A DNA stretch of 64,000 nucleotides from Paraphysomonas bandaiensis (GCA_965644295.1 CBFFRP010000133.1:62001-126000), one strand, 5' to 3'; positions 23,801-56,899 are shown, numbered from the stretch's first letter. The notes: generated by a model not told the origin, from the letters alone. A program made the numbers and translations.

Positions 23801-26427
23801 CTTTTATCTGCCTCATTGGGTTGATCTGATGGAGCCGACATGGTGCTCGTGAAGGAGAAGTCCTGTACGAAATGACGTTTAGAACTGAATCTCATCTTCT
23901 GCTGTTGGTGGCGAAGGTTCTATATAAAGTATATATCAGCCCTATATGCACAATAGTGATTCAATGTACCTCAGCACTGGAGCTTCCAGACGGAGGTGGG
24001 GATGTAGATATCAAGAGCTCCAATGGAGGCGAGGCCGGTGGGCGGGGGGGGATGTCAGGGCTATCTGGGAGTGACTGACGCGGCGTGTGTTCTAACGATG
24101 AGACACTATCCACGGCTAGTAAGCGTTCGGGAGTTGCACCAGAGGGTGCGCTGGAAGGAATGTGCAGATCTGTACTGAGAGACATGTCCACTTCTAAGAC
24201 GGGAGGCTTGTTTCCAGCATCACCAGTGATAGCACTGCTGGTTTCATAGCTGTCCTCATCACCAGCAATACTTCTTTCTGAGGAGGAATATGAAAATCCT
24301 TTAAGTGAGTTGGATTTACTGAGGCCGGAAGATGATGTTTTTCTGTCTGTGTCTTCAGAAGTGCTTATACTTGGCGATGAGACTTCCATGAGAAGCCTTT
24401 CAGCAGTATTCATTAACTCCCTGGCGTTTTCTTCAGAGTCTGTGGAGATCATAGATTCGTGTGGAACTGGCACCGGAGGGGTGGCTCGTGGTGGTGTCAA
24501 CGAAGGGACGTACTGAACATACCGACTCGGGTCCACCCTGTATCAACAAATAAATAAAATCGTTCATAATTCTATACTACTCCTATATATAAACTAGATA
24601 CACATATTAAATGCATGAGAAGATAATGCATGAGAAAGATGATGAGCGTTAAAGTAGAAAATATTGTATTAATACATGCTGCAATGAATCATACCGCAGT
24701 GAGTCATCTGACTGATCCATAACCTCAGCTGTGGCGACCTCTTTCTGACTGTCATCCGTTAGGTCTATACGACTGAACATACCTTCCACAGCTTCCGAGC
24801 TTCTCACAGAGGTACAAGAGCTTAGTAAGGAGGAGTCATTCTGCAAAGCATCCACATCATCGTCAATAGAATGAGAGATGTCACATTCTTCATCGCGGTG
24901 GAGATGTGAAAACCCTTCACTGGCATGGTGTGATGAACCATCTGTTCTCGGTTGGTCAAGGTGGGAGGAATCCCCATCGTTTACTTCGGTCTTTTCAATA
25001 GAACTCTCCTGTATATTTTGATGGTATGAGTGAAAGAGCTCGTCCAAACTATCTACGGTTGATATAGATGTGTCCACACCACTTGCTTCCGCTTCATGAA
25101 TCTCTTCAGTCGGCGAGCTGGGTAAAGTAGGAGACGGCTTCTCTCTGTGAGGGTAGTCAGTGTCAAAGGTAGAACGGTATAAGTCTTCTGCAGCCGCTAC
25201 AGCCGCTGTAGATTGTCTCAGATCCATCTGGCTGGATTCAAAATCTTCTTCATTACAGAATTCCTGGCCATACATGGTTTCTCCAGCTTCCCACATCAGT
25301 CCGGAGGGTACTTTGTTTGCGGTACCTTTAGTCGTCCGCGATTGCTGATCTCTGCGACTATTATCGTCATGCCACTCTAAACCTGGGGTAATGCCCCCTG
25401 CACTGCGGGGTCCAAATCGAACCTTTTTCCTTCCAAGAGCATCAGCGAATTCTTTCTCGAAGGCCACTTTAACCGCTTTATCAATTTGTTTCTCTCCAAG
25501 TTTAGTCCGTCCTTGGGATTGCAATCGCTCCAATGCTTGCTCTGCAGAACGCACACGTTCAGTGCGATCTCCAGATTTATCTACAGCTTCCAGGATATTG
25601 AAGGCATCTCCAATACCTGTGAGATCTTGCTTCTCTTTTTCTCTCTTACGGGCGACATTGTAGCGTTGCTTGGAACGCCATTTCTGTTTCAACTCAGCGA
25701 GCATACGAGCACGTATCGTGCGCGCTGTTCTAAAGTACTCTTCTTCCGAGGAATTGGTGACAACGCCAGGGTCGCGAGATGGGTCTGACCCATGACGAAC
25801 CACTCGTGCATGAACATATACTCCACCACGCTCTTGAACCGATACCGCGCTTTGCAAAACCGTGTTTTGTTGATGCTCTTTGGCTGCACCATGGAGGGCA
25901 CGGCGTTTCAAGCTGCGCGAAATTAGCGCCTGGCGAGCCTGTCTGCTCTCCAAATTTAATCGTGCAGTCTCTCTGTCCATAAGACCTTGCTCAGATCGTA
26001 CTTTGAAGTGGTGCTCGGCGTGGGTCTTGGCCCGAGAATTGAACGCAATTTGTTTCCGTCGAACCTCGAGGGCAACACGCTCTCGCTCAATTTGCCTGGA
26101 CAAATATACCTCCTGTTTGCGCTCTTTCTTCGCATCCATGTGTTTAATATCATGATCATGATCCACAGCCAACCTGTGGGCCTCACCAGTGGCGAGAAGG
26201 TTACTGCAAGTTGTCCCCTGTAGAGTATGTAATGCGCTGAGCTTCTTACGGGTCTTATTCTCCTGACAACTCTCAATTTTTCGTTGTTTTCTCATCTCTT
26301 TCAACTTATTATACGACTCACAGCGTGTCTGTGCAAGGAGCTTCTCTTGTTTCCTCACAGCTTTTAATCTTTCCATTTTTATTTGCTGTATAGCTGATTG
26401 TGTGGCATAATACTCTGTCTGAGGCAT
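20869..26427 (-). CDS. Large coiled-coil/Ser-rich protein with CEP295/Ana1-like N-terminal domain (about 4 exons)
   Basis: ORFs 24649-26502, 23961-24536, 23416-23895 and 20869-23397 linked by GT-AG introns; N-terminal motifs 'RLKAVRKQEK', 'GEAHRLA', 'RERVALE', 'AFEKEF' resemble recalled CEP295 motifs. Confidence 0.6.
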
Positions 26428-26955
26428 CACTGCACTTATGGACCTCTCCACACACTCAAGAATATACGAACTATACAGTTGGGATGTGTGGTAAACACCC
26501 AATGAATGTATGTGAGGTATGGAGGGCGATATGTGAATAATTGAGAGGAATCTTAACTCCAGTGTGTGTGTATGTGCTGTGTGTGTATATTCTCATACTT
26601 TTGAATTTAAATACGAGATGACGTAACCCGTGTGTTGTCTTGTGTAACCGGGTGAATACGTCAGTAACCCGTAAAAATCATGCTGTGCCCATTGTTACTT
26701 CTATAGATCGTTGCCTTCAACAGCCTTCCATTTGCCTTGTCGATTAGTAATAAAATCCATATTTTTTTACTCCAGCCGGTGCATAAAATCCCTTGTATAA
26801 TATCAAATCAGTAGTTTTTAGGCTTATCGAAGGGACCCTAAAAATTTCATCCTTCTGTATATATATCTGGATATATACTTCACTAATTATCATTGATATA
26901 TTCAATGAATTGACCCCTAGAGCAAGGGATCGGTGGTGAGGAAGGTACAGATATC

Positions 26956-29900
26956 ATGGCGTGGCAGACATCTTTTTCTGAGGGCGAATTGTATTATTTT
27001 AACACCACTACAGGAGAAGTAACGCACGAGTGTCCTGATGAGCTAATTGATGAAGATGGAGCATATCAATGGGCCAGTCACGAAGAAGATGTGTTTGTTC
27101 CTTGTAAAATTATTGAAATCGACGGTGATCGTGCCTATATTGAAATTCAGGGTGGAAAAACACTGCATGTGAACTCCTCCGCTCTGACTAATCAATCTAT
27201 ACCCAGCATGCAATCGCTATTAACTTTTCCGCACGATTTATTGGAGATGGACATAATCAATGAACCTTCTGTCTTGTATACTCTTAGGAATCGCTTCATG
27301 AAAGATGAAGTGTACACCTCTGTGGGAGATATTTTAGTTGTAGTAAATCCTTTCAAGACCCTCTCGACTCCTCCTTATGAAGAGTACTTGCAGACCAGTC
27401 GCTCTGAAATTCAGAAATTACGTCCTCATCCTTTCTTGACGGCTTCCAATGCGTATAATCTTATGAAGTCGACCAATGTAAACCAAACAATACTCATTGG
27501 AGGCGAATCCGGCTCCGGCAAGACGGAGACAACTAAAACGTGTCTGCGGTTCCTCTCATTGGCTGCAGGATCCTCGCAAAATGCCGATGTTGAAGGACGC
27601 ATTATGGCCGCTAATCCTATTCTAGAGGCGTTTGGAAATGCGAAGACTATTCGAAACGATAATTCAAGCAGGTTTGGAAAGTTTCTCGAACTATATTATT
27701 CCTCAGATGGAAGTATACATTCGTGCACTACCACGAACTACTTGCTGGAAAAATGTCGGGTCCACCGACAGAGTACAGGAGAAAGATCATTCCACATATT
27801 CTATCAGCTGTGTGAGGCTGCCCATTGGGCTGAAACCAGTATCGAAAGTGGACAATCTGTACTGGGTGATGATGAGTTCAGGAATTCTCTTCAGCTTCAA
27901 CCTATTGAATATTTTAGTTTTCTTTCTCAAAGTGGGTGCACTCATATCCCTGGCGTTATCGACCGCTTAGAATTTCTCTCCACTGAAAGTGCAGCTCGGA
28001 CACTGGGATTTCGTGAAAGTGATATATGTGAATTGTTCTCCCTTTGCGCAGCTGTTTTGCATTTAGGAAATTTGAGAGTCAGTGAAAGAGCATCTGATGA
28101 TGGCACCGATGGCTGTGTCATTGATGAACTAGATGAAACGTCGAAGTCTTCCCTATATGTAGCATCCTCAATACTAGGTGTATCAACAGAGCAGCTGTGT
28201 ACTGCTTTATGCAGTCGCTCGCTATTTATTCGAGGGGAGCGGACTGTGTCTGGCCTGTCCGCACAACAGGCCCTTGAATTCAGAGATGTGTTATGCAAAT
28301 ACCTGTATAGCGACGCGTTCGATTGGATAGTTCGAAGCGTAAATGTGACGTTTGAATCCGGTGGTTCTGTAGGGCAATCAGAGCAAAATTTATTTATAGG
28401 CATTCTGGACATATTTGGATTTGAAATATTTGACGTGAACTCTTTCGAACAGGTTAGAAAGCATTTGCTATTTCATTTATTTTTAAATTCTGGATACTAT
28501 TACCATTCTTTTACTTTGACTAACTATATATGAATATCCAGTTATGCATCAATTATGCCAACGAAAAGCTGCAACAGTTCTTCAACCGTCGTGTATTTAA
28601 AACTGAGGAGGCCCTGTATATTAACGAAGGCATTCCGCTTGATGGCTTCGAGTTTGTGGATAACCAGGTCGGTATTTTATCTGACATGAAGTGTATATGC
28701 TCTCAAAAAAGTGCCATGAGAGCGCATAGGAATACGAGTGCATGTGTGGTATTGACATCGTAGATCTTGTTTGGCATGCTCATGTGCGGTCAATAGGATG
28801 TGTTAGATTTGATAGAGTCAAAGCCAAGTGGAATTTTGTCTATTATCGACGATGAAGTTAGTATTCCTAGAGCAAATGACGTGACACTCCTTCGGAAACT
28901 TTATCAAGCCCATGGCGAATCCGGTGCTGAAAGGTCTACCGCTTCTGCGCGCTTCTTGAGCTCTGCATCGGCATCTGCCAATGACAGCTTTGTGATTTCG
29001 CACTATGCTGGCAGGTACAGTGCAGAAGATGATAGATATGTATAATACACATTTCCACTGCTGTGCTGCCGTTATTATAGAGTATTCTATATGATAGAAT
29101 AAAAAGGTGCTGCATTAGTTTCTGTGATTTGTGTTACAGTCGTGTACCGAATATTGCTATTATTTAATCATATCTTACTGAAAAATGTACAGCGTGGAGT
29201 ATCGGATTGACGGATTTCTGGATACCAGTAGGGACAAGCTAAATGATGACTTACGTGAATTTCTAGAGAAATGTACCTCAAAGCTGACACTGTTGAATGA
29301 CGCTTTTCTGAAGAACAGCTCCTCAAACATTACTCGTGCATCTTCTAAAGTGCAAACGCTGGGTAAGAAGTTTCGAATACAGTTAGAGCAGCTTCTTGGC
29401 ACCTTATCATCTACTACTACCCACTATATTAAGTGTATAAAACCCAATTGTCTGAAGGCCCCAAATTGTTTTCAGGGTACAACTTCGTTTAGCCAGTTAA
29501 AGGCATCGGGGGTATTTGAGGCTGTGGCGATTAGAAAACGGGGACTGACATTTCGTATGTCACATGAAATGTTCATCCGTGAGTACGGACCACTCCGTCG
29601 AGATTTCATCTGTGACAGTAGACGGAATAAGAAAGCTCGGTGTGAAGCGTTAGTTGGCTATTTGCAGTCACTCCCGAACGGCGAATTTGCGAAAGGATTT
29701 TTTATTGGGAAAACCCTTGTATTTTGGAGATATGATCAACAGAAACGTATATCAGACCTCATGTACCGGCTTAATCTTCTATGTTCTGTGCGCTTACAGA
29801 GTGTTATCAGGGGTTTTTGTTGCAGGCAAACGTATGCGCGAATGCTATCAGCTGTGTCCTGTGCGAGAAATGTTCTTGTGTTGCCAGACGTAGAATCCTC

Positions 29901-32181
29901 ACTCAATAGCATAGACCATGCTATCGATTTGTTAAGTAAATTTAAGTACAGACATTACCAATTGCTTCTGGTCAAGAAAGAAAGAATACTTGAGGTCAGG
30001 CGACTGACTGTTGCTCTTGAGGAAATGCAGCACATACCACTGCGTGATATTGATGAAAAGTGGATAGATAGTGCAAAAGCTGCAATGAAGATAGGCGTGA
30101 CAGGACCTGCAGCAGAGAAGGTTTTTGCGATGTATAAACTTGGTTCGGAAAAAGTAGAATGTATGCAGCGCCTGAAAAGTGTAATATCTTCCCCTACTTA
30201 TGATACCGAAGAAATTGAGAGTGTGCTGAGAGATTTGGGAAAGCTCAAACAATCTCTGGGATATGACTTTTGTGTGGAAGAGGAGGGCATCTGCAGAGAT
30301 ATTATGATATCTTTGCAAGGTACTAACGGCACCTATACTCCTGTCTATGATGGGGGTCGAATAGCTACTGCAGAAGTCGAAGGGAGGAATGTTTCCGTAC
30401 GTGACACACCAGCAGTTGCTTCATTACGCGACAGTTGTATTGTATGCAATGAAGTATTCGAGTACCCACCCCGCGCGCGCACGCCGAGAATGCTGTCTTG
30501 TCTACATTGTTGTTGTGCAAGGTGTCTTAATGACATACGGGATAGGTTGAAAGCGGGGATTACATGTCCTGTTCCCGGATGCCAAGCCTTTACAAAGTGT
30601 GCTTCCGTCACTGCTCTGAAAGTGAATACCCGCGTTCTGTCTCTACTTCCTCCACTGTGCGATAACTGTGAAGAGGAAGCCGCTACTCTGAAATGTCTCC
30701 ATTGTGCCACAGATTGTGCTAGACTCTGTCCGTCATGTTCGGATAAGCATCAGAAGATAAAAGCTTTTAGGAACCACCGAATGGTGAAGTTGCAGAACCT
30801 CAAACTCAGTTCGCTAGATACGGATGCGTCGAATTGCGTGAGACATCCTTCTAAGAAGTTAAATGCGTACTGCACGAACTGTGAAACTGTAGTTTGCTTA
30901 TCGTGTGCAGTTTTTGATCATCCCGATCACACCGTACTTCCCAGTTCAACGGCAGGGGGAAAAGAGCGAGATATAATTGCTTCCATGTGGACAGATTTAA
31001 AATCAGATATATCTGCTCTTAAAAATATTCACATGGAACTGAGCTCCACTCAACCGGCACTACAAGACCAACGCCGGATTATGCGTGAAATGACTTCAGT
31101 TGTTTTCAACTCAATCGAGTCACTGGTACGGAGTCGACATGCAGACCTTCTTTCTTCCCTGGAAGTGCTGTATTCGAAGAAACGCAGAGCATTAGTTGAC
31201 CAAATTGAAGCATTGACTTTCGAACTAGAATGTCATAACAGCGCGATATCGACTTGTAGTCAGATATGTGAAACTGGTAGTGCGACGGAGGTCTTGCAGA
31301 TGGTTCCCAATATGCGTAGTCATCTGACCGATTTGTTGGGCACGCCTCTCAGTACAAGTAATGTGGTCGATAGTGATCTTGCCTTTTCACCTGGACCTAA
31401 GGAGGAGGTACAAAATCTCATATCGTCTGTTGGTTTGTGCCGTGGCACACCCCAGTGTCCGGACCCAATGAAGTGCTCCCTAGAAGTTGTTCAATGCGGT
31501 CTGTTCTGTTCATCGTGGAGGTGTCTTCTGCTCTTGACTCTTCGGAATAACCAAGGCGAGAAATTAGGCAAAGGTGGGCAGCCAGTCGCATTTGAAGCCT
31601 ACTCCAACCTACCTCCATCTGTGCCTGTGGATGAAGTCCCTAATGTACCAAATGATAGTGACTCAAGCGTACGACCTACCACTGTACGAAAATACGTGTT
31701 GCCAAATTCTGATACAGGAGCTGCTTCTCAAACCAGTGAATCTACAACGGTTCCACTGGTCTCGCGGCGTACTACGACAAGAAGTAACGACCCTGTGTCT
31801 CATCGAAATAGCAAGAGTCCGTTCACCACAAGCGTAACGGACAACCATGATGGAACATACTTTTTGCTGCTGTCGTATTGCCCGTCTGAAGGCAGGGTCC
31901 CTGACATGTGTAGTCAGCCAGAACCAGAGGCTTATGTGACTGTGAAGCTCTTCGGACAGTCTGTGCGGGGTAGCCCATTGACACTCAACCCATATGCAAG
32001 CGGCGACATTGATGTGGCCACATTTGATGGTCATCTTCCGAGTAGTGTGGGGACGAATGACAACCGCGGGGTTAGTAGAAGCGTGTCTGATGACAATATC
32101 AGTCAAATGACCTTCGAAACTTCGAATTCTGGGAGAACTGTTGAGAGTTTCTTCAAGTACATCACGGGAGGTCTGATTTAG
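26956..32181 (+). CDS. Unconventional myosin: WW-like + SH3-like + motor + 1 IQ + RING/B-box/B-box/coiled coil/filamin tail (~1609 aa, 4 exons)
   Basis: Exons ~26956-28452, 28542-28667, 28797-29014, 29193-32181; P-loop GESGSGKTE, switch [10 protein letters not shown], switch [23 protein letters not shown] '[11 protein letters not shown]'; Cys/His patterns of RING and two B-boxes; filamin motifs 'DNHDGTY' and 'GSPL'. Confidence 0.92.
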
Positions 32182-32539
32182 ATGTTTTTGTATTGTAGTA
32201 TTACTCCCTGTTGTGTTAGTGTGTAATAGCGCTGTGTTGAGCGTATCAGCTCATATAGTTTAGGTTTTCGTTGTGGTCATTCTGATACTATTAATAGAAA
32301 ACTATGTTGGGCTTCATTTATAGGCTGCAGATAGGAAGCAGTAGTGTGGTGCAGGAATGATTCGTGGGAGTTGTATACAAATGTTTATGGTTTTAGATAA
32401 TATATAGTTTAGTGCAGTAGTATTACATGCAACATGGCGTGGTAAGCATTAACGGCCCATTCATGGTAGTCCAGTTCCCGGCAAGTATAATGGTCTCTTA
32501 AATACTAGTCCTAAATAACAATCCACGATTCGTAACGAC

Positions 32540-34121: not shown

Positions 34122-35621
34122 TTAACAGAGCTGATCAGTCGCGCACATCCAGTCTATCGTGTGGTGGGTTGACAAAATTTTACCATTCTCAACAGTATGT
34201 ATGTCAATACTACTGATGGAGAATGACTTGTTCCCTGCCAAATCTGGTAAATGAAAGAAATCACCAACGGGTGATCCTGTAACAATGCATCTGACAACAA
34301 CCCTGTCGCCTTGGACAAGTACTTCCTCCACACTCCACCTGATATCCGGCACCATCCTCTGTAATCCTTGTACATACTCCTCAAATTCGCTCTTAGATAG
34401 AACAGTTTCACAAACACATATATAGTCCAAAGACAAAATGTCAACACGTTTACCCTCTAATTCGGCATTCGTGTTTAGAGGAGATGACACTGACAAATAC
34501 TCCAGGTATAACGGTCGTACTATGAACCTGAAGCTTTCCCTATTTAGGTCATACATAATTAGTAACGACACATTATTAAACAATCACACAATTAACTTTA
34601 TAGAAGCTGAACCCAAAGAATACAACAACACATTAGGTATTGACATCACCAGAGCTAGAGCATATAGAACATAAGGAACAGGCAATTCTTACTTCTGAGC
34701 ATCAGACAGTGCAATCTCCACACCAGATCCAATTAGTGGTGAAGTAGACAAAGGAGACGAACCTGTTAATTGCGCACAAGCACCAATCCAGTCTATCGTG
34801 TGGTGGGTTGACAAAATTTTACCATTCTCAACAGTATGTATGTCAATACTACTGATGGAGAATGACTTGTTCCCTGCCAAATCTGGTAAATGAAAGAAAT
34901 CACCAACGGGTGATCCTGTAACAATGCATCTGACAACAACCCTGTCGCCTTGAACAAGTACTTCCTCCACACTCCACCTGATATCCGGCACCATCCTCTG
35001 TAATCCTTGTACGTACTCCTCAAATTCGCGTTTCGATTTCACATTGTTGGTGATAAATCCATATGATTCTGACACCATATCGTTCAATAGATCGGTCACA
35101 CTTTCTGTACTCATATTAGACATATACTCCAAATATAGTGGTCGAATAGCATCTTCGGCACTTTCTTCATCGTTCTGCCCCTCCTCTTCCTCCTGTAGTC
35201 TCTGGATAATCCCTCGAATACCTTCCATCCACTTGGTTTTCTCCTCATTCGATGCAGCAGACATAAGCAAAAATTCTCTTTCATATCCCGGTGAAACCAA
35301 CGCAAATAAACACCCTTTATTACCACTAAATCCGTCTTCCAAACTCGTTACTTTAGAGGCGGGTAAGATCGGTATCTCCCCCTTAAGACGGCTTCTATTC
35401 TTATCAGTGTAATAACACAATGATGACGTAATAGCCGCGTTAGTGTTGTTGCTGCTGCTACTATGACTCTTTGATGTATTGTTAGATGTGTGTTTGTGTT
35501 TGTTTGGAGCATAGTCAGCTACAGATAGCACTATCCATCTGCGCTTCCATGTGCGTATGCTTCCCCCTTCTTTATATAGAAAACCTTCTAGGAGAATGTC
35601 TGGGGCAGAGGGGGTGGACAT
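34122..35621 (-). CDS. PH domain + two SnoaL-like (NTF2-fold ester cyclase) domains
   Basis: PH 'EGFLYKEGGSIRTWKRRW..EEKTKWMEGI'; SnoaL 'PDIRWSVEEVLVQGDRVVVR..TG..F..SIDIHTVENGKI..H..DW' twice; GTAAG donor at ~34692 and AG acceptor at ~34541 join ORFs 34689-35621 and 34122-34583. Confidence 0.85.
34147..35029. repeat. 244-bp near-identical direct repeat (34147-34390 and 34786-35029)
   Basis: Two substitutions seen between copies, both synonymous. Confidence 0.9.
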
Positions 35622-55693: not shown

Positions 55694-56899
55694 ATGGCCT
55701 CTATGACGAACAAGGATATGTTGGCATTTTTTCTCGCTGGACTGTTGAATAACAGCAGCTATGTGATTATGATAGCAGGGGCTAAAGACATCTCGCCTGA
55801 GATGGTGGGACTAGTGTATGTCTCCGCTATGATCCCCTCATTCGTTATCAAAGTATCTGGGCCTTATTGGTATCATTTGCTAAACTATCGGACGCGTATG
55901 CTTTTAGCTTCCTGGCTTATGACTGGCTGCTTCATCACAGTGGCTGTGGGCGGTATCTTTCAGATGATCGAAGTGCAGCTATTTGGTGTTGTGTTAGGAT
56001 CCACGCAACAGGGTTTCGGAGAAGCATCCTTTTTAGCTTATACTGCATTCTTCAATAGCAGACAGGCACTAACGGCATGGTCAAGTGGCACAGGCATTGC
56101 AGGTATATTTGGTTATGCTTGGGTCGTGGTATTCACCATGGGTCTCGGTGCGAGCTATGAATTCACGTTGTTTTGTGCGGTGGTACTACCTGTAGTATTT
56201 TGGTTGAACTATATATATCTCTTTACTCCGCCAACTATTGCGAGAGAAACAAACCACAAATCCATTGACAAGGGGGGTGTATATTCCCCACTTGCAGACA
56301 CAGAAGACTCTGAAATCACAGACCGGAAGAGTACTGGCGAACTTGATTTGTCCGCCGCAGCGTACGAGATGTCTATGAAAGATAGGATTGACAATACCCT
56401 TGCACTGTGGCCATTTATGGTTCCCCTTTTTGTTGTATACTTTGCCGAGTATGCGATGCAATCGGGTGTTTGGGCCGCTATTGGGTTTCCAGTTGATAGT
56501 GATCACGCAAGGGACCAGTTTTACATATACAGCAATTGGATGTATCAATTAGGGGTTTTCGTGAGTAGATCGAGTGGTATGTTGTGGAAGGCAGACATGC
56601 TTTCACTATGGATGATGCCGACACTGCAGCTTTTCCTTCTTGTGTTCTTCATACTCGATGCATATTTCATGTGGTGGTACGATTGGTCACTACTACTTCT
56701 GTGTTTTGTTGTGGGTTTATTCGGGGGTGCTGTCTATGTTGGTGGGTATGCATTGATGGCTGAAACCGTGCCCCCACATCTGAAAGAGTTTTCACTCTCC
56801 GCGTCCGGTGTATCGGTTGATATTGGGGTCGCTCTGGCAGATGTGGCCGGAATACTTATTCAACAAGCTCTATATGATCACCATGATTTGTCAGACTGA
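55694..56899 (+). CDS. CLN3: Battenin (CLN3/Btn1 family)
   Basis: Intronless 401 aa multi-TM; 'AFFLAGLLNNSSYVIMIAGAKDI', 'GFGEASFL', 'AWSSGTGIAG', 'PLFVVYFAEY', 'YQLGVFVSRSS', 'GLFGGAVYV'. Confidence 0.95.
   Translation: MASMTNKDMLAFFLAGLLNNSSYVIMIAGAKDISPEMVGLVYVSAMIPSFVIKVSGPYWYHLLNYRTRMLLASWLMTGCFITVAVGGIFQMIEVQLFGVVLGSTQQGFGEASFLAYTAFFNSRQALTAWSSGTGIAGIFGYAWVVVFTMGLGASYEFTLFCAVVLPVVFWLNYIYLFTPPTIARETNHKSIDKGGVYSPLADTEDSEITDRKSTGELDLSAAAYEMSMKDRIDNTLALWPFMVPLFVVYFAEYAMQSGVWAAIGFPVDSDHARDQFYIYSNWMYQLGVFVSRSSGMLWKADMLSLWMMPTLQLFLLVFFILDAYFMWWYDWSLLLLCFVVGLFGGAVYVGGYALMAETVPPHLKEFSLSASGVSVDIGVALADVAGILIQQALYDHHDLSD

What the first reader, a model, noticed from the sequence alone, without database searches (positions are those of the whole stretch)
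26956..32181. Myosin motor fused to a complete TRIM/RBCC-filamin E3 ligase module
Seen in sequence: the last exon runs without a stop from the motor C-terminus and IQ motif into a RING-HC ([19 protein letters not shown], ~30436-30582), B-box1 (CDNC..CLHC..CPSC..H..H), B-box2 (CVRH..CTNC..CLSC..H..H), a coiled coil and a split filamin/Ig repeat (PDPMKC..LRNNQGE..GG..DNHDGTY..GSPL). The N-terminus carries a WW-like segment ([16 protein letters not shown]). Established: RING-BB-CC-filamin is the TRIM45 / TRIM2-3 architecture, and mammalian TRIM2/TRIM3 bind myosin V. Inference: a Rosetta-stone fusion producing an actin-walking ubiquitin ligase that may dimerise through an antiparallel TRIM coiled coil. 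I know of no described myosin class with this tail.
Basis: partly seen in the sequence, partly recalled or inferred. Interest (0 to 1): 0.9.

Follow-up and report, generated by a model that had tools for sequence, protein, structure and literature searches.

The report
Diatom myosin with TRIM-type ligase tail
A marine diatom makes one 1609-residue protein that joins a working-looking actin motor (myosin) to a complete TRIM-type RING/B-box/coiled-coil/filamin module. I found this combination in no myosin catalogue or paper, and it would put a ubiquitin-ligase-like machine directly on an actin motor.

Summary
A four-exon gene (26956-32181, + strand; three GT..AG introns) encodes 1609 residues in this order:
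- a WW-like start and an SH3-like domain
- a complete myosin motor and one IQ motif
- an unassigned linker of about 190 residues
- RING, B-box 1, B-box 2 and a coiled coil of about 130 residues
- a filamin-type Ig domain split by a 62-residue disordered insert
- a conserved C-terminal motif

Evidence that it is real:
- One spliced transcript-like contig covers the whole gene, with all three introns removed.
- Eight environmental orthologues (33-42% identical) carry the motor end and the RBCC-filamin tail in one reading frame, and every zinc ligand is invariant.
- The family profile matches TRIM3, TRIM28 and TRIM2.
- The folded C-terminus matches the TRIM45, TRIM3 and Lin-41 filamin domains.
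- The coiled coil is modelled as an antiparallel homodimer (0.56 against 0.01 in controls).

The motor is closest to WW-motor-MyTH4 (class IV-like) myosins. The most likely history is therefore a class-IV-type motor whose MyTH4 tail was exchanged for a TRIM module.

Ligase activity is inferred, not shown. The window's RING scores below the Pfam cut-off, ends in CX4C, and lacks the linchpin arginine. The myosin V "Rosetta stone" link is weak.

I rate it a new variant of known kinds.

The parts
26956..28452 (+). Exon 1 (499 codons): WW-like start, SH3-like Myosin_N, and the N-terminal two thirds of the motor
   Evidence: Pfam Myosin_head 1.5e-113, profile positions 3-385. The donor at 28452|28453 is confirmed by the joint in the X8 contig.
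26962..27036 (+). WW-like segment (first Trp and final Pro kept; second Trp replaced by His)
   Evidence: Pfam WW 16.3 bits and WW_2 16.4 bits, below the cut-offs of about 27. Conserved in L001 and L009; L001 has the canonical second Trp.
27070..27180 (+). Myosin N-terminal SH3-like domain
   Evidence: Pfam Myosin_N: 26.2 bits in the window, 30 bits in the L001 orthologue, cut-off 27.
27235..29730 (+). Myosin motor domain, interrupted by three introns. P-loop GESGSGKT at 27502-27525; switch I (NSSRFGK) and switch II (DIFGFE) are intact.
   Evidence: Myosin_head is contiguous over the four exons. The motifs are invariant in three orthologues. The closest solved structures are myosin Vc, VIIa and Va at about 1e-78.
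28453..28541 (+). Intron 1 (89 nt, GT..AG)
   Evidence: Skipped in X8 record 18 (table 5).
28542..28667 (+). Exon 2 (42 codons)
   Evidence: Myosin_head profile positions 384-429; X8 contig.
28668..28796 (+). Intron 2 (129 nt, GT..AG)
   Evidence: Skipped in X8 record 18.
28797..29014 (+). Exon 3 (218 nt; ends in phase 2, and the split codon AG|C encodes Ser)
   Evidence: Myosin_head profile positions 430-493. An X14 contig ends exactly at 29014 (table 8).
29015..29192 (+). Intron 3 (178 nt, GT..AG)
   Evidence: Skipped in X8 record 18.
29193..32181 (+). Exon 4 (2989 nt including the stop): motor end, IQ, linker, RING, B-box 1, B-box 2, coiled coil, filamin, C-terminal motif, all in one open frame
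   Evidence: ORF list. Eight orthologues have the same single frame. RNA-derived contigs of X8, X14 and X15 lie on it.
29794..29835 (+). Single IQ motif (LQxxxRGxxxR)
   Evidence: Read from the sequence. Q and G are invariant in 9 orthologues.
29836..30405 (+). Post-IQ linker of about 190 residues. Its first half is conserved; its second half is deleted in the second orthologue clade. Unassigned.
   Evidence: No Pfam match (protein 10). The Atlas feature search stayed below 0.9. Alignment.
30436..30582 (+). RING finger, C3HC4, last ligand pair CX4C (CPVPGC)
   Evidence: All eight ligands are invariant in 9 sequences. zf-C3HC4 passes in P0001 (27.7 bits) and P0002 (22.9 bits) against a cut-off of 21; the window scores only 17-18 bits on zf-RING_UBOX. 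The family profile matches the TRIM2, TRIM32, TRIM56 and TRIM28 RINGs.
30658..30777 (+). B-box 1 (C-x2-C-x8-C-x2-C-x7-C-x2-C-x3-H-x8-H)
   Evidence: Ligands invariant. ANCHR-like_BBOX 16.6-19.8 bits, below the cut-off. The profile aligns through RING, B1 and B2 of TRIM28 (6h3a, 5e-24).
30835..30930 (+). B-box 2 (CxxH...CxxC...CxxC...HxxH)
   Evidence: Pfam zf-B_box 36.4 bits against a cut-off of 24.1. Foldseek matches the MuRF1, TRIM54 and TRIM5alpha B-box 2 at rmsd about 1 A.
30943..31341 (+). Coiled coil of about 130 residues, modelled as an antiparallel homodimer
   Evidence: AF2 helices 180-312 of alignment A4. Profile match to TRIM3 B-box 2 plus coiled coil (8amr, 2.6e-24). Homodimer model 0.56 against a best control of 0.01, with contacts at i+j of about 478.
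31456..31995 (+). Filamin-type Ig domain (7 strands), split by a 62-residue disordered insert (31627-31812) after the third strand
   Evidence: AF2 pLDDT is about 90 in the strands and below 50 in the insert. Top Foldseek matches are the Dictyostelium filamin rod, the TRIM45 filamin domain (TMt 0.68), the TRIM3 filamin domain (0.72) and Lin-41. The family profile's best match among solved structures is the TRIM45 filamin domain, 1.6e-4. Pfam Filamin scores 14-21 bits, below the 26.9 cut-off.
32143..32178 (+). Conserved C-terminal motif [12 protein letters not shown] (family pattern SF[FL]K[YF]I[ST]GG[LF][LI]) after a disordered Ser-rich stretch. Function unknown.
   Evidence: F, K and I are invariant in 9 orthologues. 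Low-confidence short helix in the model.

Best explanation
**Shown.** This is one expressed diatom gene for a 1609-residue unconventional myosin. Its N-terminal half is a catalytically intact motor of the WW-motor-MyTH4 (class IV-like) lineage with one IQ motif. Its tail is not MyTH4. It is a complete TRIM-type module: RING, B-box 1, B-box 2, a long coiled coil, and one filamin-type Ig domain carrying a disordered insert.

**Inferred mechanism.**
- The coiled coil pairs two chains antiparallel, as in TRIM proteins. A RING/B-box pair and a motor head would then sit at each end of a rod, and the two filamin domains would fold back towards its middle.
- The heads bind and move on actin.
- The filamin domain, and perhaps the C-terminal motif, binds a partner or substrate.
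- The RING recruits a ubiquitin-loaded E2, so proteins met on or along actin filaments are ubiquitinated.
- With heads at opposite ends, the dimer is better suited to bridging or sliding two filaments, or moving on bundles, than to hand-over-hand walking on one filament.

**Likely origin.** Exchange of the MyTH4 tail of a class-IV-type myosin for one of the diatom's own RBCC genes.
For: - **One gene, one mRNA.** A 5153-nt contig of run X8 covers 26945 to beyond 32400 with the three predicted GT..AG introns removed. A DNA contig of the same organism label (X5) keeps them. Contigs from X14 and from a poly-A marine metatranscriptome (X15) lie on the tail.
- **Conservation.** Eight orthologues in two clades carry the motor end and the RBCC-filamin tail in one frame. 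L001 and L009 also hold the upstream motor exons.
- **Motor integrity.** The P-loop, switch I and switch II are invariant.
- **TRIM module.**
  - All RING, B-box 1 and B-box 2 ligands are invariant.
  - The family profile matches TRIM3 at 2.6e-24, the TRIM28 RBCC at 5e-24, and the TRIM2, TRIM32 and TRIM56 RINGs.
  - The closest named relatives are amphioxus TRIM2/3-like proteins and fish TRIM3.
  - The filamin fold is supported.
- **Dimer.** The model scores 0.56 against a best control of 0.01. This mark was reached by 21 of 30 proteins solved as pairs of one chain and by 0 of 23 solved as single chains. The runs agree in at least 94% of their contacts, and pLDDT is 86. Contacts are at i+j of about 478, which means antiparallel.
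- **Motor lineage.**
  - The next-best database hits all have the WW + Myosin_head + MyTH4 architecture.
  - The closest paralogues in the same genome (51% and 50% identity) have MyTH4 matches about 4 kb downstream on the same strand.
  - In the tree, the RBCC myosins form one clade (SH-aLRT 100) inside an unresolved group of MyTH4 myosins.
- **Possible donors.** The genome has RBCC paralogues that do not lie next to any myosin match.
Against: - Ligase activity is untested.
- The window's RING scores below the Pfam cut-offs.
- The last RING knuckle is CX4C in 7 of 9 family members.
- The residue after the last RING ligand is Gln here and Ser or Glu in the two nearest orthologues. Many active RINGs have the linchpin Arg there; the other clade has Arg in 5 of 6 and His in 1.
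- Some TRIM RINGs are inactive as monomers, for example TRIM3 (PMC9732051).
- The dimer model may score well from memory of solved TRIM coiled coils.
- The tree uses only 210 motor columns and a quick search, and the RBCC clade sits on a long stem. Class IV ancestry is therefore likely, not proven.
- No substrate, localisation or motility data exist.
Confidence: 0.6

Rival explanations
1. The fusion is the same, but the RBCC-filamin tail is not an enzyme. It would serve as an antiparallel dimerisation and assembly scaffold plus cargo-binding module, with a RING that is inactive or only structural. This resembles the tandem-B-box coiled-coil proteins Pcr4 and Pcr5, which build the preconoidal rings of Toxoplasma.
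For: - The best Foldseek matches of the RBCC model are the Toxoplasma preconoidal-ring chains of entry 9ya0, at about 1e-5.
- The family profile also hits PCR4 and PCR5 by sequence, at 4e-5 and 2e-4.
- Pcr4/Pcr5 are described as an antiparallel coiled-coil heterodimer with B-boxes at the ends. They are structural and sit at an actin and myosin H hub (bioRxiv 10.1101/2022.06.06.494926).
- The window's clade lacks the linchpin Arg and has a non-canonical last RING knuckle.
- TRIM3 RING alone is inactive.
Against: - All eight RING ligands, the hydrophobic residue before the second Cys and the Pro after the seventh ligand are kept in nine sequences that are only 33-42% identical. This argues for selection on a working RING.
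- Five of the six sequences in the other clade keep Arg after the last ligand.
- The Pfam scans found RING matches in this family's closest unnamed relatives. I recorded no RING in the matches to PCR4 and PCR5, and the preprint passages read name only B-boxes and a coiled coil.
Confidence: 0.3
2. The architecture is an artefact: a misassembly, two adjacent genes read together, or a read-through transcript.
For: None found. The only weak points are that run X8 is labelled RNA by guess, and that contigs cannot prove a single molecule from end to end.
Against: - The junction lies inside one 998-codon open frame.
- The same frame, from motor end to RBCC, is present in eight independent assemblies from other organisms.
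- An independent DNA contig (X5, 12 kb) is colinear with the window.
- The X8 contig has lost exactly the three introns, so it derives from spliced RNA.
Confidence: 0.02
3. The protein is real but already catalogued: a known stramenopile class IV or 'orphan' myosin whose tail domains are recorded in a specialist database (such as CyMoBase) or a figure. In that case nothing here is new.
For: - Kollmar and Muehlhausen 2017 state that class-4 tails changed several times in stramenopiles and haptophytes, and that dozens of stramenopile orphans are unclassified.
- Figures and databases are not searchable here.
Against: - RING, B-box, filamin and TRIM do not occur in the main texts of Odronitz 2007, Sebe-Pedros 2014 or Kollmar 2017, nor in the supplements held as text.
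- Full-text searches gave nothing.
- In the 5.8-billion-protein collection all eight orthologues are unnamed environmental sequences. None comes from NCBI, UniRef, MMETSP or EukProt.
Confidence: 0.1

Closest known systems
TRIM45 (TRIM class X: RING, B-box 1, B-box 2, coiled coil, filamin)
   Same: The tail has the same domain order and number, with two B-boxes and one filamin-type Ig domain as the last folded domain. The TRIM45 filamin domain (2ds4) is the best sequence match of the family's C-terminal profile among solved structures (1.6e-4) and a top structural match (TMt 0.68).
   Different: - Here the module is the tail of a myosin.
- The filamin domain carries a disordered insert after its third strand, 62 residues in the window and longer in several orthologues.
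- The RING ends in CX4C.
- A conserved C-terminal motif follows.
- The organism is a diatom, not an animal.
TRIM2 / TRIM3 / TRIM71 (class VII: RBCC, filamin, NHL)
   Same: They are the closest named sequence relatives: fish TRIM3 at 1e-9, amphioxus TRIM2/3-like at 1e-22, and TRIM3 B-box 2 plus coiled coil 8amr at 2.6e-24. TRIM3 filamin is matched at TMt 0.72. TRIM2 and TRIM3 are functionally linked to myosin V and actin (PMC9732051).
   Different: - There is no NHL propeller here.
- TRIM2 and TRIM3 have a single B-box, while this protein has two.
- TRIM2 is reported to bind myosin V through its NHL domain, which is absent here.
- The fused motor is class-IV-like, not class V.
Class IV (class-4) myosins: WW, motor, MyTH4 (with or without SH3), in stramenopiles, rhizarians and haptophytes
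   Same: The motor's nearest relatives in the database and in the same genome have this architecture. An N-terminal WW-like segment and an SH3-like domain are shared.
   Different: - There is no MyTH4 domain.
- The tail is RBCC-filamin.
- The nine sequences form their own long-stemmed clade.
- The WW segment has lost its second Trp in two of three orthologues.
Myosins whose tails are enzymes or signalling modules: class III (kinase), class IX (RhoGAP), class XVII (chitin synthase)
   Same: The same design principle: a motor fused to a catalytic or regulatory module (my own knowledge of these classes). Other readers of this scan report a myosin with a phospholipase-C-like tail in this same genome, which I did not check.
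   Different: None of these tails is a ubiquitin ligase module. I found no myosin with a RING or B-box in the literature searched.
Toxoplasma Pcr4 / Pcr5 (tandem B-box, antiparallel coiled coil; preconoidal rings)
   Same: They come from the wider group that also holds diatoms (stramenopiles, alveolates, rhizarians). They have two B-boxes followed by an antiparallel coiled coil and are associated with an actin and myosin hub. They are the best structural match of the RBCC model.
   Different: - They are not fused to a motor.
- The passages read describe no RING in them.
- Their role is structural.
- Sequence similarity is weak (about 1e-4).

Membership tests
Myosin superfamily | Complete motor domain (Pfam Myosin_head) with P-loop, switch I and switch II | tested here: met
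   Myosin_head profile positions 3-679 are contiguous over four exons. [15 protein letters not shown] and DIFGFE are present and invariant in orthologues.
Myosin superfamily | Light-chain-binding neck (IQ motif) after the converter | tested here: met
   One IQ (LQxxxRGxxxR) at 29794-29835, with Q and G invariant. Read by eye; no Pfam IQ hit was reported.
Class IV myosin (sensu Sebe-Pedros 2014 and Kollmar 2017) | MyTH4 domain in the tail | tested here: not met
   No MyTH4 hit in exon 4, although MyTH4 is easily found elsewhere in the genome.
Class IV myosin (sensu Sebe-Pedros 2014 and Kollmar 2017) | WW domain N- or C-terminal to the head | tested here: inconclusive
   WW 16-19 bits against a cut-off of 26.9. 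The segment is conserved, but the second Trp is kept in only 1 of 3 orthologues.
Class IV myosin (sensu Sebe-Pedros 2014 and Kollmar 2017) | Motor domain groups with class IV motors in a phylogeny | tested here: inconclusive
   The tree uses 210 columns of the motor's C-terminal part. The RBCC clade (SH-aLRT 100, stem 1.22) lies in a polytomy with MyTH4 myosins (SH-aLRT 92). It was a quick search, with no curated class references.
TRIM / RBCC family | N-terminal-most RING finger with eight zinc ligands (C3HC4) | tested here: met
   The eight ligands are invariant in 9 sequences. zf-C3HC4 passes in P0001 and P0002. The window itself is below the cut-off and its last pair is CX4C. The profile matches TRIM RINGs.
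TRIM / RBCC family | One or two B-boxes directly after the RING, B-box 2 always present | tested here: met
   B-box 2 scores 36.4 bits against 24.1. The B-box 1 ligand pattern is invariant and aligns to TRIM28 B-box 1, but it is sub-threshold in Pfam.
TRIM / RBCC family | Coiled coil after the B-boxes that forms an antiparallel homodimer | tested here: met
   This is a model, not a measurement. Helices span about 130 residues. The homodimer model scores 0.56 against a best control of 0.01, with antiparallel contacts. The pass may reflect memory of solved TRIM coiled coils.
TRIM / RBCC family | E3 ubiquitin ligase activity of the RING | not testable with these tools
   Only sequence features are available. 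The hydrophobic residue before Cys2 and the Pro after Cys7 are kept. The linchpin position is Gln in the window and Arg in 5 of 6 members of the other clade.
TRIM class X (TRIM45-like) | Filamin-type Ig domain as the C-terminal domain | tested here: met
   Met by fold and by family profile. Pfam Filamin on single sequences is below the cut-off, at 14-21 bits against 26.9.
TRIM class VII (TRIM2/3/71-like) | NHL beta-propeller after the filamin domain | tested here: not met
   No NHL hit. Only about 60 residues follow the filamin domain, almost all modelled below pLDDT 50.

The most novel reading that the evidence does not exclude
The nine sequences found a new diatom-restricted myosin class whose tail is an active TRIM-type E3 ligase. 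An antiparallel dimer would carry a motor head and a RING at each end and ubiquitinate proteins on actin filaments or bundles. This would be the first motor protein that is itself a ubiquitin ligase. It would also show that a complete two-B-box RBCC-filamin module exists outside animals.
Probability: 0.35. Interest if true: 0.85.

Novelty: new variant of a known kind. Interest (0 to 1): 0.7.

Why it matters
- **For motor biology.** Known myosin tails bind cargo or carry kinase, GAP or synthase modules. A tail that is a full TRIM-type ligase module would add protein ubiquitination to what a cytoskeletal motor can do on its track. It would also give a natural test of how an antiparallel coiled coil arranges two heads.
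- **For ubiquitin biology.** The tripartite motif was described as exclusive to animals (PMC2533329), and later only TRIM37-like genes were reported outside them (PMC3503706). Here a RING / B-box 1 / B-box 2 / coiled coil / filamin module is found in a silicifying alga, both fused to a motor and as separate paralogues. This bears on where TRIM architectures arose.
- **For testing.** The gene is expressed in culture-derived and open-ocean RNA data, so it is open to experiment.

Tried and rejected
- **Post-IQ linker (29836-30405).** No Pfam match. The Atlas feature search gave a best score of 0.85, below the usable level. It stays unassigned.
- **C-terminal motif as an Atg8-binding (LIR) motif.** Rejected. 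The aromatic-x-x-aliphatic spacing seen in the window is not kept in the second clade.
- **Rosetta-stone reading with myosin V.** Considered and downgraded. The motor is class-IV-like, and the NHL domain reported to bind myosin V is absent.
- **P0109 (576 aa).** It has the same RBCC plus split filamin. I could not tell whether it is a stand-alone protein or the last exon of another fusion, because the contig ends 86 nt upstream, with stops but also a possible acceptor site there.
- **Origin of the RBCC module.** Gene transfer from animals, or independent assembly, cannot be judged, because most close relatives are unnamed environmental sequences.
- **Literature.** Searches for any myosin with RING, B-box or filamin found nothing.
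- **Joined product.** Following the operators' note, the joined (spliced) 1609-residue product was never sent to a search, a fold or a family scan. All searches were done exon by exon by reference. A local script only counted its length and stops, without printing it.
- **Numbering.** The tool shows 'M' for the GTG codon at 29194. In the spliced protein that residue is Val 615.

Full report
**1. What is there**

The region holds four coding pieces on the + strand. Reading the junctions gives this model:

| Part | Coordinates | Note |
|---|---|---|
| Exon 1 | 26956-28452 | 499 codons |
| Intron 1 | 28453-28541 | 89 nt, GT..AG |
| Exon 2 | 28542-28667 | 42 codons |
| Intron 2 | 28668-28796 | 129 nt, GT..AG |
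| Exon 3 | 28797-29014 | 218 nt, ends in phase 2 |
| Intron 3 | 29015-29192 | 178 nt, GT..AG |
| Exon 4 | 29193-32181 | includes the stop |

The coding sequence is 4830 nt, giving 1609 residues with no internal stop. Pfam Myosin_head runs in register through all four pieces, at profile positions 3-385, 384-429, 430-493 and 492-679. The splice model is therefore also the one that restores an unbroken motor.

The joined product was never searched or folded. A local script only counted its length and stops.

**2. Is it one transcript?**

I laid four public runs on 26800-32400.
- Run X8 holds one 5153-nt contig from 26945 to beyond 32400. It skips exactly the three introns at GT..AG.
- Run X5, with the same organism label, holds a 12-kb unspliced contig that is colinear with the window (19 differences in 5601 bases). 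The spliced form therefore comes from RNA and the locus is not a misassembly.
- Run X14 tiles 29388-32175 almost without gaps (two of about 3 and 135 bases), including the stretch from the linker into the RING. One of its contigs ends exactly at the exon 3 border.
- A poly-A marine metatranscriptome (X15) covers 30885-32275 in one contig.

**3. Conservation**

Searches with the tail, with the motor end and with a family profile find the same eight proteins: P0001, P0002 and P0016-P0021. They are 33-42% identical to the window over exon 4.
- All are unnamed sequences from metagenomes or run assemblies.
- Each carries the motor's C-terminal part and the whole tail in one open frame.
- Two loci also show the upstream motor exons: L001 and L009.
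- In L001 the upstream divergent neighbour gene is also shared with the window.

The nine sequences fall into two clades.

**4. The tail, domain by domain**

- **Zinc ligands.** In the nine-way alignment the eight RING ligands, the B-box 1 ligands and the B-box 2 ligands are all invariant.
- **RING.** The window scores below the Pfam cut-offs (17-18 bits), while P0001 and P0002 pass zf-C3HC4. The last RING pair is CPxPxC (CX4C) in seven of nine sequences and CX2C in two.
- **B-box 2.** It passes its cut-off (36.4 bits against 24.1).
- **Family profile against solved structures.** It matches TRIM3 B-box 2 plus coiled coil (2.6e-24), the TRIM28 RBCC over RING, B1, B2 and coiled coil (5e-24), and the TRIM2, TRIM32 and TRIM56 RINGs.
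- **Closest named relatives.** Fish TRIM3 and amphioxus TRIM2/3-like proteins.
- **RBCC model.** Confidence is moderate, with about 130 residues of helix after B-box 2. Foldseek returns the Toxoplasma preconoidal-ring B-box proteins, TRIM28, TRIM72 and TRIM5alpha.
- **Coiled coil.** Two copies of B-box 2 plus coiled coil are modelled as a homodimer.
  - The score is 0.56 against a best control of 0.01.
  - This mark was reached by 21 of 30 proteins solved as pairs of one chain and by 0 of 23 solved as single chains.
  - The runs agree in at least 94% of their contacts, and pLDDT is 86.
  - The best-defined contacts obey i+j of about 478, which means antiparallel, as in TRIM proteins.
  - Because TRIM coiled coils are solved, the pass shows likeness rather than proof.

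**5. The filamin claim**

On single sequences Pfam Filamin stays below its cut-off (14-21 bits against 26.9). It is nevertheless the only or joint-top family matched in all three orthologues tested.

The family profile's best match among solved structures is the TRIM45 filamin domain (1.6e-4). Both halves align in order, and the insert falls at one point of that domain.

The AF2 model has seven strands with pLDDT about 90, and residues 73-134 are disordered. Foldseek ranks these first:
- the Dictyostelium filamin rod
- the TRIM45 filamin domain (TMt 0.68)
- the TRIM3 filamin domain (TMt 0.72)
- Lin-41 filamin

The 'split filamin repeat' is therefore real, with three strands before the insert and four after it. 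No NHL propeller follows. The architecture is that of TRIM45, not TRIM2/3.

After a disordered Ser-rich stretch, all nine proteins end in a conserved motif, SF[FL]K[YF]I[ST]GG[LF][LI]. Its role is unknown.

**6. The motor**

The P-loop, switch I and switch II are intact and invariant. There is one IQ motif. The N-terminus has a conserved WW-like segment, sub-threshold and with its second Trp kept in only one orthologue, followed by an SH3-like domain.

After the eight orthologues, the next-best database hits are almost all WW + Myosin_head + MyTH4 proteins of rhizarians, haptophytes and unnamed marine eukaryotes.

In the same genome, the closest motors (51% and 50% identity, contigs C578 and C238) have MyTH4 matches about 4 kb downstream on the same strand.

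A tree of 210 motor columns puts the nine RBCC myosins in one clade (SH-aLRT 100) on a long stem. That clade sits inside an unresolved group dominated by MyTH4 myosins. This points to a class-IV-type ancestor with a swapped tail, but the tree is short and quick.

**7. Context**

- The genome has at least seven silicon-transporter loci above the Pfam cut-off. This fits the 'diatom' label used by other readers of this scan.
- It has RBCC paralogues on contigs C125 and C365 that are not next to any myosin match. These are possible donors of the tail.

**8. Literature**

- RING, B-box, filamin and TRIM do not occur in the text of Odronitz and Kollmar 2007, Sebe-Pedros et al. 2014 or Kollmar and Muehlhausen 2017, nor in their supplements held as text. 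Figures and CyMoBase could not be searched.
- Class IV is defined there by WW plus MyTH4. Class-4 tails are said to have changed in stramenopiles.
- Sardiello et al. 2008 call the tripartite motif exclusive to metazoans.
- Marin 2012 found only TRIM37-like genes outside animals.
- TRIM2 is reported to bind myosin V through its NHL domain. TRIM3 sits in a myosin V complex and ubiquitinates gamma-actin. TRIM3 RING is inactive alone (PMC9732051).

**9. Mechanism**

*Shown:* one expressed, conserved polypeptide with an intact motor and a complete TRIM45-like module.

*Modelled:* antiparallel dimerisation.

*Inferred:*
- E2 recruitment by the RING
- partner binding by the filamin domain
- action on or along actin
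- a geometry with the heads at opposite ends, which suits bridging or sliding filaments or moving on bundles

The main rival keeps the architecture but makes the tail a non-catalytic scaffold. It is supported by:
- the Pcr4/Pcr5 likeness
- the missing linchpin Arg in the window's clade
- the unusual last RING knuckle

**10. Verdict**

It is a new variant of known kinds, a myosin with a previously undescribed TRIM-type tail, and probably a new diatom-restricted class.

Noticed in passing
window 32143-32178 (and the last 12-14 residues of P0001, P0002, P0016-P0021): All nine family members end in a conserved motif SF[FL]K[YF]I[ST]GG[LF][LI], after a disordered Ser-rich stretch. F, K and I are invariant. 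It matches no family and its role is unknown.
   Followed up: partly
window 24649-26502 (- strand); L001 5993-7735 (- strand): The divergently oriented upstream neighbour (617-aa open frame, no Pfam match) is also the upstream neighbour of the orthologous myosin in L001, so the gene pair is syntenic in that relative. It is not in L009. Another reader flagged it as CEP295/Ana1-like; I did not check that.
   Followed up: partly
G000 contig C125:166628-170452 (L004) and C365:142799-147047 (L005, L006): The same genome has RING / B-box / coiled-coil paralogues that are not next to any myosin match. L004 has about 480 residues of unassigned sequence before its RING. Tripartite-motif proteins therefore exist in this alga apart from the fusion.
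   Followed up: partly
L022 87-1817 (P0119 is a different protein; this is P0109, 576 aa, from a public run assembly): An RBCC protein with the same split filamin domain (27% identical to the window's tail, 1e-50). It may be a stand-alone relative or the last exon of another fusion. The contig is too short to tell.
   Followed up: partly
solved structure 9ya0 (Toxoplasma preconoidal ring), against models mf10e4362b5a8 and m4bfdcf339565: The best structural matches of the B-box plus coiled-coil model are the Toxoplasma PCR4/PCR5 chains. Other chains of the same ring match the filamin-like model. This hints that B-box / coiled-coil / Ig proteins tied to actin and myosin structures may be an older feature of this wider group of eukaryotes.
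   Followed up: partly
G000, whole genome: The genome gives about 60 exon-level matches to the myosin head, at roughly 40 separate loci, and at least 12 MyTH4 matches. That is many more myosin loci than the 10-11 per diatom cited in PMC11420354. Some may be allelic contigs (for example C578 and C238).
   Followed up: no
window 34689-35621 (- strand): A 310-aa open frame joins a PH domain (4e-12) to a SnoaL-like polyketide-cyclase fold (1.5e-16), which is an unusual pairing.
   Followed up: no
window 55694-56899 (+ strand): A single-exon CLN3 (Batten-disease protein family) homologue, Pfam CLN3 1.2e-78 over the full profile.
   Followed up: no
window 26800-32400 against runs X5 and X8: Runs filed under a second organism label differ from the window at only 19 of 5601 bases. 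The two labels are the same or very closely related strains.
   Followed up: no
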